Source of the DNA: Octopus bimaculoides
Lineage: Eukaryota
Direction: 5' to 3'
Length of the DNA: 33,972 nucleotides
Assembly (NCBI RefSeq): GCF_001194135.2
Contig: NC_068989.1
Coordinates: 82,575,454 to 82,609,425, forward strand
The position numbers were made by a program, and so were the translations under genes. The notes below the pieces were generated by a model, which did no database searches, was not told where the DNA came from, and was given only the letters and a program-made list of their open reading frames with translations. How positions within the stretch are numbered: the stretch's first letter is position 1; each line of letters begins with the position of its first letter. This document shows, in pieces, positions 1,116 to 4,996 of this stretch.

Positions 1116-1391
1116 CTATTGAATGCAAGTGTAGCACAAAAGAATGTCGCCAAGAACGAACAGAGAGCTGTACAGCAAAATATGCCTGTTACGTGGAAAT
1201 ACATGTCGACGATAACGGCTTACAGACAGGCTCCGTTCTAAGGGGTTGCATAGACACAAAAGCATCGCTACTCTGTGAGAACAGACGACCAGAAAATATT
1301 CGGATTAATAAACCTTGGCCCTATTTATATTGCTGTGAACAGGATTTCTGTAACCAGCAAGTCTTACCCACGCTGCCCAGCAACAATAAGA
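1116..1391 (+). CDS. BAMBI: BAMBI-like pseudoreceptor, ectodomain exon (three-finger/activin-receptor-type domain); penultimate coding exon
   Basis: Polypyrimidine tract plus cgcag acceptor ending at 1115; a|gtaagt donor at 1391/1392; both ends phase 1. Translation IECKCSTKECRQERTESCTAKYACYVE...RGCIDTKASLLCENRR...YCCEQDFCNQQ has 10 Cys ending in CC-x4-CN, as in type I TGF-beta receptor and BAMBI ectodomains. Confidence 0.9.
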
Positions 1392-1991
1392 GTAAGTACA
1401 TAGTTGATTTTATTTGTTTGTTATTATAGAGGAGAGGGTTGTACCAGAGAAACAGGGACCTACATGTTAAGAACTCACCATGACTTTCTTAAATATTTGT
1501 CGTTTTAGAAACAATTCACATAAATTACTACAAACTTTAATTGTAATATTTATTATGCTAGAAATAGCAATCAAATCGCACTCCCTTGTTTCTTAAATCG
1601 TACTCTCTATGTCGGTTCTAGTAACGTATCATTCTTTTTTCTAATGATGACAAGTTACCAGCTTCTCGCTCAACTCCTCTGGAGAAATGGATCTAGTGAG
1701 TGGTCTCCTTTGACACTTAACGCGGTGAAGCGTAGTCGAATTCCATACACACACGCACATACACACACATACACACATACACGCACACATACACATATGT
1801 AGAGAGAGAAAGAGAGGGAGAGTGAGGGAGAGAGTTAAATAAGATTCGGGTAAGAAACCTTGTAGAATGCTATGCAAAGCTCGTCCACAGTTAATGGCTA
1901 CCTGATGTCATCATGCAGTGGAAATGCTCCTGCTACTGGATATACATCAGGAATTCCAGGGTATCCGTAGAGTTTACATAAACAAATAGAT

Positions 1992-2157
1992 GATAGAAAA
2001 TGGAATGAATAGCAGTCTTCATTTTTGAATCTCTACAATTGTTTCGACACATTTTTACACCTGTAGTACACAACATCTCACCAATGTACCATTGCTGTAA
2101 ACATGTGTCGAAACAATTGTTGTGATTTAAAAATAAAGAACGTCGTTTATTCCATTT

Positions 2158-2163
<6 letters not shown>
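1992..2163. repeat. Fold-back inverted repeat (~60-bp well-paired arms plus an imperfect inner stem)
   Basis: gatagaaaatggaat...caattgtttcgacacat (1992-2052) pairs with atgtgtcgaaacaattg...attccattttctatc (2103-2163). Inner tttacac..gtaca / tgtac..tgtaaa extends the stem. Confidence 0.9.
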
Positions 2164-2240
<77 letters not shown>

Positions 2241-2500
2241 GTCTGTCTGTCTGTCTGTCTGTCTGTCAGTTTGTCTGTCTGTCAGTTTGTCTGTCTGTCT
2301 GTCTGTCTATCTATTTCTACATGCGCGAGCGCGCGTACGTGTATAAAGTGAGATAAAGAAATAAGGAAAAGCGAGAAAGCGGATGAGTGTGCGTGTAAGT
2401 GTGTGTAAGTGTTGTGTGTGAGAGAGAGAGGGAGAGAGCGATAGAAGGAGAGAGAGAGAAAGAGAGAGAGAGAGGGGGAAAGAGAGAAAGAGAGAAAGAA

Positions 2501-2534
<34 letters not shown>

Positions 2535-2734
2535 CGAAATAGAGAGAGAGCACGTGATTGGTTCTTTTTCATCGATTTTCTGAAAGGACAAAAGGCAAAG
2601 CTAACGACAGTAGGACTTGAATACTTGAATCCAGCGAGCAGAAAGCCGGAAGAAAGAGCTCAATTCATTCTACTCGACGTAATTTACGACACTGCCAAAA
2701 ATGGCCAAGTCACATTCTCTACCCCTCTAAATAT

Positions 2735-3215
2735 AAAACGAAGATATATTACCTGATGACAAATGTTGCCTTTGTGGGGCTTTTACTGAGACAATAAACT
2801 ACATTGTATCAACGATTTCTCACACTTATTTTAAAGCCACAATAATTATCAGATTTATTTTGACATACACTTAAACACCAAATTTTAGCTGCTGCATCGA
2901 AATTCTCTCTTAAACACATCTAAACTGGCGCCTGTTTTTTTAAAAATGTCATTGTGAGAATATTATCGAACTTTAACATAAAGATTCCGTATAATATGAC
3001 GTGTAATATGGCTGACATTGTTTATGGCAAAAAGCACAAAAACGTCTTGATTATCGCATTAGCTGCTCCAAATGACTATATAGTTGTGTAAAGACGAACT
3101 GAAAAACGAAGAACTATCAACTTAACTGTTGAACTAAAAACATTATAGCAGTTAACGAATGTTTTTATAATCGGATTTGTTATTGGTACCACTGGAATGA
3201 CACGGCAGCCATTTC
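2735..3215 (+). mobile_element. Degenerate RLE-type (R4/Dong-like) non-LTR retrotransposon 3' fragment in the BAMBI intron
   Basis: DDKCCLCGAFTETINYIVS (Zn-knuckle-like), then NMADIVYGKKHKNVLIIALAAPND..RRTEK..LTVELKTL*QLTNVFIIGFVIGTTG, matching the restriction-like endonuclease pattern RPDIV..IID.A.P.D..KE.EK..L..EL..LW..V.IIP.VIG..G. Contains stops. Confidence 0.7.
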
Positions 3216-3386
3216 TGTAAGGACATCGACATGTAAGGATAGTCATAGATGCCTTCCATAAAATAACAAGACAAGGGACTTTAATTAGATTTAAGACAGT
3301 AATCTCACCCGGTATTTGTTAATCTTGAACATTTATGCTACATTTTTATGTATGATTTTCAAGATGTCTTTATATGTATTTTACAG

Positions 3387-3916
3387 TTACGGTTTCAAGT
3401 CCAGCGAGTGGTAGACCCTCCACTGTCTACCCTATGTCCCACCTTCAAGCCGTTAGTCGTCCGAACACAAGGAGCGTGAACCCGATGTACATCGCTATAC
3501 CTTTGGTCGGAGTGTGCATTTTGTTGGCCCTGATAGTGTTCGCCCTTTACTTGCTTCGACAACGGACAGAATATAACAGTTTCCAGTCTCCTGCCTCCGG
3601 AGTCAGCAACCCCAGCTCAACCAATGACCATTTTGATGTCAATGGCATTCACAGAGGCAAACATTCAGTTATGGATTTACCTTCGCGAAATTCCAAGTCA
3701 CAACCTGCAGTTAATACGACGGAAAGCAGCACAGGCTGCGGTACTAGTGCCGCTGCGACGGCAGCTTCCGCCGTGGCAGCGGTGGCAGCAGAAGCTGCTA
3801 CTTCCGGTTCGTCATTGTCGAAATCAGTTTGTAATAACAGAGACTTGATTAGCCATTGTTCAGAAAGCGACAGATCATCGTCTGGTAGTGAAACAAAACT
3901 GTTTCTCCAGGTTTAA
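3387..3916 (+). CDS. BAMBI: BAMBI-like pseudoreceptor, last coding exon (stalk, TM helix, kinase-less cytoplasmic tail, stop)
   Basis: Open frame to TAA at 3914-3916. TM segment YIAIPLVGVCILLALIVFALYLLRQR resembles the BAMBI TM as I recall it (IAVPIAGGLILVLLIMLALRMLR). No kinase domain follows. Confidence 0.85.
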
Positions 3917-3964: not shown

Positions 3965-4440
3965 TTAAACAACAACAACAACAACAACAACAGCAGCAGC
4001 AGCAGCTATTACCACGATAACAGCTGTAACAACAACATTAACATATAATCTTAAGTGAAAAACAACAGCAATATTAAACAAAAATAATTGACAATATGAA
4101 CAAAAACAAAAAGGAAACAACATAATGTAAAATTTAAAACAACATTTAATTAATTAGTGAAAAAAAAACAAAACAACCACAGCAACACAAACAACAACAA
4201 TTTAAACAATGAATGGAGATAACAGAATAGCAACTAAAAACAAAAATAAAAGTAATGGAAACTATATCCACATTAACCACTACAATAGCTTCACCACCAA
4301 CAACAACAACAAACGCAATAATAACAACCACAACAACCACAGCAACAATAACAACAGCAATAACAACCACAACACCAACAACATAAACAAAACAATGAAC
4401 AACTATGATAAAATTTATAACAAAGGAGGAAAAAGAGGAA
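3965..4440 (+). repeat. (AAC)n/(AGC)n-rich low-complexity tract, probably the proximal 3' UTR of the BAMBI-like gene
   Basis: Imperfect AAC/AAT/AGC repeats immediately after the stop codon. Confidence 0.75.
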
Positions 4441-4525: not shown

Positions 4526-4953
4526 TCTTCTTCTTCTTCTTTCACCCTCTCCCTCGCATNNNNNNNNNNNNNNNNNNNNNNNNNNNNNNNNNNNNNNNNN
4601 NNNNNNNNNNNNNNNNNNNNNNNNNNNNNNNNNNNNNNNNNNNNNNNNNNNNNNNNNNNNNNNNNNNNNNNNNNNNNNNNNNNNNNNNNNNNNNNNNNNN
4701 NNNNNNNNNNNNNNNNNNNNNNNNNNNNNNNNNNNNNNNNNNNNNNNNNNNNNNNNNNNNNNNNNNNNNNNNNNNNNNNNNNNNNNNNNNNNNNNNNNNN
4801 NNNNNNNNNNNNNNNNNNNNNNNNNNNNNNNNNNNNNNNNNNNNNNNNNNNNNNNNNNNNNNNNNNNNNNNNNNNNNNNNNNNNNNNNNNNNNNNNNNNN
4901 NNNNNNNNNNNNNNNNNNNNNNNNNNNNNNNNNNNNNNNNNNNNNNNNNNNNN

Positions 4954-4996
<43 letters not shown>

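What the first reader, a model, noticed from the sequence alone, without database searches (positions are those of the whole stretch)
3839..3916. BAMBI-like tail ends in a type I receptor GS-domain-like motif
Seen: the last residues are RDLISHCSESDRSSSGSETKLFLQV*. Known (sequences from memory): type I receptors have [24 protein letters not shown] (TGFBR1) and [22 protein letters not shown] (BMPR1A), where type II kinases phosphorylate the S/T residues and the LP dipeptide binds FKBP12. DRSSSGSETKLFLQV (3869-3913) aligns without gaps to [15 protein letters not shown]. All five S/T phosphoacceptor positions are kept (S,S,S,S,T), Leu is kept and Pro becomes Phe. RDLI (3839-3850) matches the KDLI helix with a short insertion. 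The stop falls just after the GS box, before the kinase domain would start. BAMBI is normally described as lacking both GS and kinase domains. Inference: this may be a pseudoreceptor that retains a phosphorylatable GS decoy, acting as a substrate trap for type II receptors or a phospho-dependent Smad dock. It may also be a molecular fossil of BAMBI's origin from a type I receptor. The terminal -LQV could double as a PDZ ligand. Short Ser/Gly motifs can match by chance, so conservation is decisive.
Basis: partly seen in the sequence, partly recalled or inferred. Interest (0 to 1): 0.75.

Follow-up and report, generated by a model that had tools for sequence, protein, structure and literature searches.

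The report
Conserved serine-rich tail of spiralian BAMBI
The octopus BAMBI pseudoreceptor ends in a serine-rich 17-residue motif that is almost unchanged across molluscs, annelids and ribbon worms, so it is surely functional, but every test for it being a type I receptor GS domain failed or was only marginal.

Summary
Window 3839-3916 (+) reads RDLISHCSESDRSSSGSETKLFLQV*. It is the end of the last exon of a BAMBI orthologue.

[DE]-x-[ED]-R-S-S-S-G-S-E-[TS]-[KR]-L-[FL] closes the protein in all named cephalopods, a chiton, gastropods, bivalves, annelids and nemerteans. Among three cephalopods, 6-12 of the 14 motif codons differ, and every change is synonymous.

The GS-domain reading is not supported:
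- Pfam TGF_beta_GS gives no hit at E<=10. Genuine GS peptides cut at the same point score 35-43 bits.
- A GS HMM built here gives 1-4 bits, and 1.5-7.5% of shuffled tails do as well.
- hhalign gives P=0.08, and pairwise shuffle tests give p of about 0.006-0.09.
- No tail has the Leu-Pro dipeptide.
- RDLI is found only in octopods.
- Vertebrate, ambulacrarian and arthropod BAMBIs lack the serine cluster.
- AlphaFold2 predicts a disordered tail.

Best reading: this is a spiralian-specific, probably phosphorylated short linear motif on a disordered pseudoreceptor tail. It resembles a GS box in pattern only. A decoy-substrate role remains possible but untested.

The parts
1116..1390 (+). Ectodomain exon of the BAMBI orthologue. 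It encodes the type I receptor-like cysteine-rich domain ending in the CCEQDFCN cysteine box.
   Evidence: Acceptor cag|CT at 1115/1116 and donor A|gtaagt at 1390/1391. Pfam Activin_recp E=8.9e-6 on the spliced product. A profile of mollusc orthologues hits BMPR1A/1B ectodomains in the PDB.
1391..3386 (+). Intron in phase 1, between the ectodomain exon and the last exon.
   Evidence: The gtaagt donor and ttttacag acceptor give ...SNNK-I-TVSS..., identical to predicted protein P0001.
3387..3916 (+). Last coding exon: stalk, transmembrane helix, whole cytoplasmic tail and stop codon.
   Evidence: Open frame to TAA at 3914-3916. Same end in O. vulgaris, Argonauta and transcript contig L001.
3485..3556 (+). 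Transmembrane helix (MYIAIPLVGVCILLALIVFALYLL).
   Evidence: AlphaFold2 helix at residues 130-160 of P0001, pLDDT up to 96. This block is invariant across molluscs.
3740..3808 (+). Ala-rich insert found only in octopods (GTSAAATAASAVAAVAAEAATSG), in the disordered tail.
   Evidence: Present in Octopus and Argonauta only. It is the best chance match to the GS region within the octopus cytoplasmic domain.
3839..3850 (+).
   Evidence: Present only in octopods. Other cephalopods and molluscs have KINRC/KVNRC here.
3863..3913 (+). Conserved spiralian BAMBI C-terminal motif, ESDRSSSGSETKLFLQV. The clade consensus is [DE]-x-[ED]-R-S-S-S-G-S-E-[TS]-[KR]-L-[FL]-x-x-[VA].
   Evidence: Invariant or nearly invariant R, S, S, G, S, E, K, L, F in 17 mollusc proteins and in 32 aligned tails from three phyla. 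Only synonymous codon changes among three cephalopods. Coil with pLDDT of about 50.
3914..3916 (+). Stop codon TAA.
   Evidence: Similarity to the orthologous DNA drops to random immediately after it.

Best explanation
The finding is the C-terminal short linear motif of the octopus orthologue of BAMBI, the kinase-less BMP/activin pseudoreceptor. The protein has a type I receptor-like ectodomain, one transmembrane helix and a cytoplasmic tail of about 110 residues that is predicted to be disordered. In spiralians the tail varies freely, apart from a juxtamembrane stretch and the last 17 or so residues: [DE]-x-[ED]-R-S-S-S-G-S-E-[TS]-[KR]-L-[FL]-x-x-[VA]. This block has been held almost unchanged since before molluscs, annelids and nemerteans split.

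Shown: it is coding, it is present in transcripts of orthologues, and it is under strong purifying selection. Also shown: it is not a GS domain by any sequence test, and it is absent from non-spiralian BAMBIs.

Inferred: it arose or was elaborated in the spiralian stem. It probably works as a phosphorylation-dependent docking or decoy site. The reasoning is that BAMBI sits in complexes with constitutively active type II and type I Ser/Thr kinases, and the conserved serines are framed by conserved charged residues (R, E, K) and a hydrophobic end. That pattern is typical of a kinase-substrate or phospho-reader motif. The similarity to the GS box ([13 protein letters not shown]) is best treated as pattern-level analogy, not as membership or demonstrated descent.
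For: **Identity of the gene**
- Pfam Activin_recp matches the spliced product.
- BLASTP gives E=2e-18 to starfish 'BAMBI homolog' and 7e-9 to the human-type BAMBI cluster.
- A profile of mollusc orthologues hits BMPR1A/1B ectodomains only.
- NCBI names the scallop orthologue BAMBI homolog.

**Conservation of the motif**
- All 18 mollusc hits end in the motif, with R, S, S, S, G, S, E, K, L, F invariant.
- There are 43 distinct motif-bearing tails among 240 profile hits.
- Named carriers outside molluscs are Owenia, Paralvinella, Lineus and Tubulanus.

**Purifying selection.** 6-12 of 14 codons differ among window, L001 and L002, and none changes an amino acid. Similarity is lost right after the stop.

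**Transcription.** The full ORF lies uninterrupted on a 1335-nt Logan contig from run SRR27666085, whereas the genomic gene has introns.

**Disorder.** AlphaFold2 predicts coil with pLDDT 37-52 for the whole tail.

**Not a GS domain.**

**Lineage restriction**
- Vertebrate tails are ..LSLVHWGMY[SGTR]GHGKLEFV.
- Hemichordate and starfish tails are ..GDPYI.EKFFNSV, and arthropods end ..YDNK[LM]AVVS and variants.
- hhalign finds no similarity between spiralian and vertebrate tails (P=0.21).
Against: - No experiment or phosphoproteome was available, so phosphorylation and the binding partner are inferred.
- The GS resemblance is nominally better than shuffled controls (p of about 0.01). hhalign's best local match of the tail profile does land on the GS box. 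The motif also ends where the GS box ends. Descent from a GS box therefore cannot be excluded.
- About half of the motif-bearing proteins come from unnamed ENA/Logan contigs. A carrier outside Spiralia could be hidden among them.
- No amphioxus, xenacoelomorph, priapulid, bryozoan, phoronid or flatworm BAMBI was identified.
Confidence: 0.6

Rival explanations
1. First reader's hypothesis. The tail is a retained, truncated GS box inherited from the type I receptor ancestor of BAMBI. It acts as a GS decoy: type II receptor kinases phosphorylate it, which traps them or creates a phospho-dependent Smad dock.
For: - There are 7-8 identities in 15 ungapped residues to real GS boxes, and all five S/T positions are occupied.
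- Pairwise shuffle tests give p of about 0.006-0.035.
- The best local match of the tail profile in hhalign is the GS box.
- Forward tails score 5-8 units above the reversed sequence in six of the seven molluscs tested, and 4 in scallop.
- In short mollusc BAMBIs the motif lies about 40 residues after the membrane, similar to the GS box in receptors.
- BAMBI's ectodomain is derived from a BMPR1-like receptor.
- BAMBI is known to join receptor complexes (Onichtchouk 1999, as cited in PMC8753366).
Against: - Pfam TGF_beta_GS gives no hit at E<=10 in any BAMBI tested, while truncated true GS peptides score 35-43 bits.
- The GS HMM built here gives 1.1-4.1 bits and aligns only SSSGS.
- The residues invariant in receptors (SGSGxG and L-P) are replaced by conserved E, T, K and F/L. 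No tail has Pro.
- RDLI is found only in octopods.
- The serine cluster is absent from deuterostome and arthropod BAMBIs.
- Other BAMBI segments match the GS box as well or better by chance: gastropod GSGLPLY, hemichordate SHSGLHRMMHRT and the octopus Ala-rich segment.
- The tail is predicted to be coil, not helix-loop-helix.
Confidence: 0.2
2. The motif is mainly a trafficking or turnover signal. A phosphorylatable serine/acidic cluster is followed by K-L-[LF] and a hydrophobic C-terminus. This could be read by clathrin adaptors (a dileucine-like motif with Ser/Glu at -4/-3) or by a PDZ protein. It would control surface level or lysosomal delivery of the pseudoreceptor.
For: - The one feature shared with some other phyla is a Lys followed by hydrophobic residues at the extreme end: KLEFV, EKFFNSV, NKLAVVS.
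- Annelid and nemertean tails read SE[TS]KLLMKV, with a Leu-Leu pair three residues from the end.
- The tail is disordered, as sorting signals are.
- From memory, not checked here: vertebrate BAMBI is reported to be degraded through lysosomes or autolysosomes.
Against: - The C-terminal residue is not fixed. It is V, A, S or T in gastropods, bivalves lack the last two residues, and arthropod BAMBIs end in S or T. That is poor for a PDZ ligand.
- Molluscs have L-F, not L-L.
- The most constrained positions are R-S-S-x-G-S-E, not the hydrophobic end.
- No motif library or experiment was applied.
Confidence: 0.13
3. The motif mimics the R-Smad C-terminal SSXS phospho-acceptor (R-C-S-S-x-S in Smad2/3, recalled from memory). 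It would act as a pseudosubstrate for type I receptor kinases that heterodimerise with BAMBI.
For: - R-S-S-S-G-S contains S-S-x-S preceded by a conserved Arg.
- BAMBI is reported to associate with type I receptors.
- This is a lead from memory, not a tested similarity.
Against: - The motif is not at the very C-terminus, as it is in R-Smads.
- Searching the PDB, which includes Smad MH2 chains, with the tail or its profile gave no hit at E<=10.
- Like the GS match, it is a short low-complexity resemblance.
Confidence: 0.05
4. The GS-like string is a chance low-complexity tail with no function of its own.
For: Ser/Gly-rich strings match GS boxes easily, as the gastropod poly-Gly-LPLY and the octopus Ala-rich segment show.
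Against: The motif is nearly invariant across three phyla, and codon changes are exclusively synonymous. That rules out a neutral sequence.
Confidence: 0.01

Closest known systems
[quoted passage not shown]
   Same: It has a type I receptor-like cysteine-rich ectodomain, a single transmembrane helix and a short cytoplasmic tail with no kinase. The last exon encodes the transmembrane helix and the whole tail. The window protein matches named BAMBI homologues of starfish and the human-type vertebrate cluster by BLASTP, and NCBI names the scallop orthologue a BAMBI homologue.
   Different: The vertebrate tail (..LSLVHWGMYSGHGKLEFV) has no serine cluster. Pfam BAMBI_C matches mollusc proteins only weakly and only over the transmembrane region (profile positions 32-79). 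The spiralian ERSSSGSETKL[FL] end has no detectable counterpart in vertebrates (hhalign P=0.21).
[quoted passage not shown]
   Same: Both carry a run of Ser/Thr around S-G-S followed by Leu-x-Leu-x-Val, with 7-8 of 15 residues identical. In short BAMBIs the motif lies about 40 residues after the membrane. The protein ends where the GS box ends.
   Different: There is no HMM match. The SGSGSG glycines are replaced by conserved Glu and Lys. There is no Leu-Pro. The preceding L-x-D-L-I helix is not conserved. No kinase follows. The tail is predicted to be disordered. Phosphorylation is untested.
Phospho-regulated C-terminal short linear motifs of single-pass receptors (serine clusters followed by hydrophobic or dileucine ends)
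   Same: It is a short block in a disordered tail. The serines are framed by charged residues and followed by a hydrophobic terminus. The flanks diverge freely while the block stays fixed.
   Different: It does not fit cleanly any consensus I can name (PDZ classes, [DE]xxxL[LI], DSGxxS, 14-3-3 mode I). The partner is unknown.

Membership tests
TGF_beta_GS domain (PF08515) | Match to the Pfam GS HMM at or above the gathering score (21.3 bits) | tested here: not met
   No hit at E<=10 for the window tail, the whole exon, the spliced protein, 17 mollusc proteins, or annelid, nemertean, human-type, hemichordate and starfish BAMBIs. Control: true GS peptides truncated at ..LLVQ score 34.9-43.5 bits.
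TGF_beta_GS domain (PF08515) | SGSGxG core | tested here: not met
   S-G-S-G-x-G is invariant in 18 of 18 receptor fragments. The tails have S-G-S-E-[TS]-[KR], with Glu at 90% or more and Lys/Arg conserved.
TGF_beta_GS domain (PF08515) | Leu-Pro dipeptide after the SG repeats (FKBP12 contact) | tested here: not met
   L-P is invariant in receptors. None of the 43 distinct tails has Pro there; they read K-L-[FL].
TGF_beta_GS domain (PF08515) | Preceding helix motif L-x-[DE]-[LM]-[IL] | tested here: not met
   RDLI/KDLI occurs only in Octopus and Argonauta, with a longer spacer. Other molluscs have KVNRC/KINRC, and annelids have Y-P-D-C.
TGF_beta_GS domain (PF08515) | Profile-level similarity to the GS region | tested here: inconclusive
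   hhalign's best match falls on the GS box, but with P=0.082 and probability 0.7%. The GS HMM built here gives 1.1-4.1 bits, equalled by 1.5-7.5% of shuffles. Pairwise tests give p of 0.006-0.09.
TGF_beta_GS domain (PF08515) | Helix-loop-helix fold packed on a kinase N-lobe | tested here: not met
   A stop codon follows the motif and there is no kinase. AlphaFold2 predicts coil at pLDDT 37-52, though a low-confidence model is weak evidence.
TGF_beta_GS domain (PF08515) | Phosphorylation by type II receptor kinase | not testable with these tools
   Needs a kinase assay or phosphoproteomics.
BAMBI | Type I receptor-like ectodomain with cysteine box | tested here: met
   Activin_recp E=8.9e-6. 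The profile hits BMPR1A/1B ectodomains. CCEQDFCN lies at the exon end.
BAMBI | Single transmembrane helix followed by a short tail with no kinase | tested here: met
   Helix 130-160 at high pLDDT. There are about 110 residues to the stop and no kinase family in Pfam.
BAMBI | Sequence relationship to named BAMBI proteins rather than signalling receptors | tested here: met
   BLASTP E=2e-18 to Patiria BAMBI homolog and 7e-9 to the human-type cluster, covering ectodomain and transmembrane helix. The mollusc profile retrieves the termite, starfish and scallop proteins that NCBI names BAMBI homologues.
BAMBI | Pfam BAMBI (PF06211) / BAMBI_C (PF19337) above gathering score | tested here: not met
   None for the octopus protein. 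Hits in other molluscs are weak and below threshold: BAMBI_C in 16 of 17 with best E=0.0023, over the transmembrane region only. The models are dominated by vertebrate sequences.
BAMBI | Inhibits BMP/activin/TGF-beta signalling | not testable with these tools
   Needs reporter or embryo assays. In Lingula, bambi is reported to be BMP-induced (PMC13121700).
C-terminal PDZ ligand | Fixed hydrophobic C-terminal residue with a class-defining -2 position | tested here: inconclusive
   -LQV in cephalopods and -MKV in annelids fit class II. But caenogastropods end -LQA/-LQS/-LQT, bivalves end -LFL, and arthropod BAMBIs end in S or T.

The most novel reading that the evidence does not exclude
Spiralian BAMBI carries a substrate mimic for TGF-beta family receptor kinases at its C-terminus. 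This could be a surviving, truncated GS box or a convergent copy of one, and it also contains an SSxS pattern. The pseudoreceptor would then inhibit signalling by soaking up or occupying the type II (or type I) kinase, not merely by lacking a kinase. This would be a mechanism not described for vertebrate BAMBI.
Probability: 0.17. Interest if true: 0.7.

Novelty: new variant of a known kind. Interest (0 to 1): 0.4.

Why it matters
BAMBI is a BMP-induced feedback inhibitor used in dorsoventral patterning, and its cytoplasmic domain is needed for inhibition. How that domain works is poorly understood. Reviews and mollusc papers simply say it lacks GS and kinase domains (PMC5569090, PMC10728939).

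In spiralians the cytoplasmic domain is free to vary, apart from a juxtamembrane stretch and this 17-residue end. The motif therefore marks where the function sits. It also gives a small, testable handle: a peptide, S-to-A mutants and a tail deletion, usable in oyster, Owenia, Crepidula or Lingula embryos.

If receptor kinases phosphorylate it, a new inhibitory mechanism for a pseudoreceptor would follow. If not, it is still an unannotated, ancient linear motif that current Pfam BAMBI models miss.

Tried and rejected
- **PDB searches with the tail.** Neither the tail alone nor a 32-tail profile gave any hit at E<=10. No GS-kinase, Smad or other chain is retrieved.
- **Whole-BAMBI profile against a GS plus N-lobe profile.** The top hhalign match was a gastropod poly-Gly/LPLY insertion, not the tail. 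I rejected it as evidence and kept it as an example of chance matches.
- **Vertebrate C-terminus as a GS relic (ILSLV....SGHG against LKDLI....SGSG).** It looked attractive in some fish (score 35, p=0.001). It is not significant for human, shark or Xenopus (p=0.07-0.75) or in hhalign (P=0.35). Rejected.
- **Spiralian and vertebrate tails as homologous.** hhalign gives P=0.21. Not shown.
- **beta-TrCP-type degron (SSGxx[ST]) and 14-3-3 / basophilic-kinase site on the third serine.** Rejected because that serine is the most variable position of the cluster: S, N, A, Q, L, T or C.
- **Search for exon 1 in the window, using the MSSIT start of the O. vulgaris model.** No match. The Argonauta gene spans about 93 kb, so exon 1 is outside the window.
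- **Bacterial promoter/terminator scan of the 3' flank.** Irrelevant for a eukaryotic gene.
- **Naming ten further motif-bearing proteins.** All come from ENA or Logan and carry no names.
- **Onichtchouk 1999.** The paper could not be read. [quoted passage not shown]
Full report
**1. What is in the window**

The window is repeat-rich cephalopod genomic DNA with many assembly gaps. Two exons of one gene lie on the + strand.
- Exon 1116-1390 has acceptor cag|CT and donor A|gtaagt. It encodes a cysteine-rich ectodomain ending in CCEQDFCN.
- Exon 3387-3916 has acceptor ttttacag|TT. It encodes a stalk, a transmembrane helix (3485-3556), a cytoplasmic tail of about 110 residues, and the stop TAA at 3914-3916.

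The phase-1 join gives ...SNNK-I-TVSS.... The spliced 267-residue product is 98% identical to a predicted Octopus vulgaris protein and 75% identical to one from Argonauta hians. Both have the same C-terminus. The signal-peptide exon is not in the window. In Argonauta the gene spans about 93 kb.

**2. The observation**

The sub-coordinates are also right. Against real receptor sequences fetched here, the ungapped alignment gives 7-8 identities in 15 residues. These sequences include BMPR1-type ...[19 protein letters not shown] and TGFBR1-type ...[22 protein letters not shown].

**3. The gene is a BAMBI orthologue**

- Pfam finds the Activin_recp ectodomain (E=8.9e-6) and no kinase.
- A profile of 17 mollusc orthologues hits only BMPR1A, BMPR1B and ACVR1 ectodomains in the PDB.
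- BLASTP to the starfish 'BAMBI homolog' gives E=2e-18. BLASTP to the human-type BAMBI cluster gives 7e-9 over ectodomain, transmembrane helix and juxtamembrane region.
- NCBI names the scallop orthologue a BAMBI homologue.
- The vertebrate-trained Pfam BAMBI models do not reach threshold on mollusc proteins. BAMBI_C aligns only over the transmembrane part.
- AlphaFold2 gives beta strands in the ectodomain and a confident transmembrane helix. The whole cytoplasmic tail is coil at pLDDT 37-52.

**4.

All 18 homologues found by the first search end in ...C[ST][DE]SERSSSGSE[TS]KLF[LI](Q[VA]). They are two octopods, three unnamed proteins closest to the octopod ones (presumably other cephalopods), a chiton, eight gastropods (two of them unnamed but gastropod-like) and five bivalves (three of them unnamed). 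Bivalves stop at ...KLFL. In the 17-sequence alignment the only invariant blocks are the cysteines, the transmembrane region and S-x-R-S-S-S-G-S-E-x-K-L-F.

A profile search of 1.84 billion representatives gave 240 hits. Among the best 150 listed, together with the first search, there are 43 distinct motif-bearing tails. A second widespread form ends [DE]-[CS]-[ED]-R-S-S-[SN]-G-S-E-[TS]-[KR]-L-L-[MVA]-K-V. Its named carriers are the annelids Owenia and Paralvinella and the nemerteans Lineus and Tubulanus. Lingula has only a degenerate remnant (..SIQSDCRLLV). Across 32 aligned tails, the Ser of G-S-E is invariant. R, S, S, E and L are 90% or more conserved.

At the DNA level I compared the 14 codons R..V among the window, an intronless RNA-derived contig (L001, run SRR27666085) and the Argonauta genome (L002). 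They differ at 6-12 codons, and every difference is synonymous. Similarity disappears immediately after the stop. The motif is therefore coding, is present in a transcript of an orthologue, and is under strong purifying selection.

**5. Restriction to spiralians**

- Vertebrate BAMBIs (112 of the 118 newly retrieved clusters; three others are starfish proteins and three end aberrantly) end ...LSLVHWGMY[SGTR]GHGKLEFV or close variants. The single Ser is not even conserved.
- Hemichordate and starfish proteins end ...GDPYI.EKF[FL].SV(xV).
- Tick, spider, sea spider, millipede and termite proteins have no serine cluster. One unnamed arthropod-like group ends ...YDNK[LM]AVVS.
- The only feature shared with some other phyla (vertebrates, ambulacrarians and part of the arthropod-like proteins) is a Lys followed by hydrophobic residues near the end.
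- hhalign finds no similarity between spiralian and vertebrate tails (P=0.21).
- BAMBI is reported to be bilaterian-specific (PMC7535936). No outgroup exists other than the receptors themselves.

One gain in the spiralian stem is more parsimonious than losses in chordates, ambulacrarians and arthropods. Sequence decay is easy, however, so loss is not excluded.

**6. Is it a GS domain?**

Pfam:
- Pfam TGF_beta_GS returns nothing at E<=10 for the tail, the exon or the spliced protein. It also returns nothing for 17 mollusc proteins, or for annelid, nemertean, hemichordate, starfish and human-type BAMBIs.
- As a control, genuine GS peptides cut at exactly the same place (...LLVQ) score 34.9-43.5 bits against a 21.3-bit threshold. 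Truncation does not explain the failure.

GS HMM built here:
- I built it from 26 distinct real GS regions and ran it with all filters off. It gives the window tail 1.1 bits, and 377 of 5000 shuffles do as well.
- Without the composition correction it gives 4.1 bits, and 74 of 5000 shuffles do as well. It aligns only SSSGS.

Profile-profile comparison:
- I compared 32 tails with a GS plus N-lobe alignment.
- The match has P=0.082 and probability 0.7%.

Pairwise BLOSUM62 scores:
- They are 25-29, with p=0.006-0.035 against shuffled tails.
- With the whole cytoplasmic domain as search space, p=0.001-0.09 for molluscs, 0.08 for the two annelids, and not significant for nemerteans.

Residue-level comparison:
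- The residues that never vary in receptors are the glycines of SGSGxG and the Leu-Pro. In the tails they are replaced by residues that are themselves conserved: Glu, Lys/Arg and Phe/Leu.
- No tail has Pro.
- RDLI occurs only in octopods.

**7. How easily GS-like strings arise**

Other, clearly lineage-specific BAMBI segments match the GS region as well or better.
- A caenogastropod poly-Gly run ends in GSGLPLY (score 33-37). It is hhalign's top hit for the whole protein.
- A hemichordate segment SHSGLHRMMHRT scores 35, p<0.001.
- Some fish C-termini score 35, while human, shark and frog do not.
- In the octopus itself an Ala-rich insert scores 30, against 29 for the tail.

In caenogastropods the better 'GS core' and the C-terminal motif coexist, so they cannot both be the relic. 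This calibrates the nominal p of about 0.01 for the tail. It is a lead, not evidence of homology.

**8. What the motif most likely does**

Shown: it is a strongly constrained block at the end of an otherwise fast-evolving, disordered tail of a pseudoreceptor.

Inferred: it is a short linear motif read by another protein. The pattern of constraint is R-S-S-x-G-S-E-[ST]-[KR]-L-[FL], that is, serines framed by fixed charges and a hydrophobic end. This suggests a kinase-substrate or phospho-reader site.

[quoted passage not shown] The nearest Ser/Thr kinases are therefore the receptor kinases themselves. A decoy or pseudosubstrate role is the most economical mechanism, and it covers both the GS-like and the SSxS-like readings.

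I give about 0.6 to 'a spiralian-specific phospho-regulated docking or decoy motif that is not a GS domain'. Within that, roughly one third goes to the receptor-kinase decoy version.

Alternatives:
- A true GS relic or type II kinase trap: 0.2.
- A trafficking or PDZ-type signal: 0.13. It is weakened by the variable last residue and by the fact that the serine block, not the hydrophobic end, is most constrained.
- An R-Smad SSXS mimic: 0.05, a lead from memory only.
- A beta-TrCP degron or a 14-3-3 site centred on the third serine is unlikely, because that serine is the most variable.

**9. Comparison with what is known, and novelty**

The literature read here states that BAMBI, including mollusc BAMBI, lacks a GS domain (PMC5569090; PMC10728939). 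By sequence criteria that remains correct.

I found no description of the conserved spiralian tail motif in the papers searched. The search is limited to open-access text. The original BAMBI paper could not be read.

The gene is a new member of a known family. The tail motif is a lineage-specific variant feature that current domain models miss. I therefore rate it 'new variant of a known kind', of moderate interest.

**10. Limits**

- There are no phosphorylation, binding or functional data.
- About half of the motif-bearing sequences are from unnamed contigs.
- Several phyla were not sampled.
- Shuffle-based p-values ignore the local clustering of Ser/Gly in real disordered sequence, so they overstate significance. 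The comparison with reversed sequences only partly corrects this.

Noticed in passing
P0008, P0011, P0013, P0018, P0021 (caenogastropod BAMBIs), about 43 residues before the C-terminus: A poly-Gly run ends in G(S)GLPLYHHHHHCDC. 'GSGLPL' matches the GS-box core better than the C-terminal motif does (score 33-37 against 29), and hhalign picks it as the top match. It is lineage-specific, so probably a low-complexity expansion. It coexists with the conserved tail motif.
   Followed up: partly
P0040 (Glandiceps), 16 residues before the C-terminus; P0070, P0294, P0321 (starfish), about 26 residues before the C-terminus: Hemichordate SHSGLHRMMHRT resembles GS [12 protein letters not shown] (score 35, p<0.001 against shuffles). 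Starfish share [TA]GLPxxxxRG at the equivalent place, with the same G-L-P-4-R spacing as the GS box. This may be chance or a separate remnant.
   Followed up: partly
L002 3001-96547 (Argonauta hians genome): The orthologous gene spans about 93.5 kb. A 397-residue MFS_1 transporter gene lies on the opposite strand inside it (72912-74105). This explains why the signal-peptide exon is not in the 34-kb window.
   Followed up: no
P0001 (Octopus vulgaris predicted protein), N-terminus: The model starts MSSIT-IECKC with no signal peptide, whereas Argonauta has MHQAGILYLCGLFSLNLPLYTAA-IECKC. The O. vulgaris 5' end is probably mis-modelled. No matching mini-exon is in the window.
   Followed up: partly
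window 3740-3808: An Ala-rich insert (GTSAAATAASAVAAVAAEAATSG) lies in the cytoplasmic tail of Octopus and Argonauta only. The octopod tail is about twice as long as in other molluscs.
   Followed up: no
P0007, P0010, P0012, P0016, P0017, P0034, P0043 (bivalve and bivalve-like BAMBIs): Bivalve proteins stop two residues earlier (...SETKLFL*), and caenogastropods end in A, S or T instead of V. The extreme C-terminal residue is therefore not the constrained part of the motif.
   Followed up: yes
window about 3970-4007 and throughout (e.g. 790-900, 4560-4960, 22800-23100, 23400-23860, 25700-26550, 29850-30600, 31700-31950): A (CAA)n(CAG)n microsatellite lies directly after the stop codon. The window also has many runs of N (assembly gaps) and abundant di- and tri-nucleotide repeats. 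No other convincing gene was seen in 4.5-34 kb by ORF listing.
   Followed up: partly
P0021 (446 aa) and P0036, P0058, P0068, P0092 among the profile hits: Several hits have two matched stretches or are much longer than BAMBI. These may be tandem or fused gene models or paralogues.
   Followed up: no
P0121, P0144, P0147, P0148, P0161 among the profile hits: A group of BAMBI-like ectodomain proteins has a transmembrane helix almost at the C-terminus and only about 10-15 cytoplasmic residues (...CYVITRFLRSNPY...). Their taxa are unknown. They may be a separate tail-less pseudoreceptor family.
   Followed up: no
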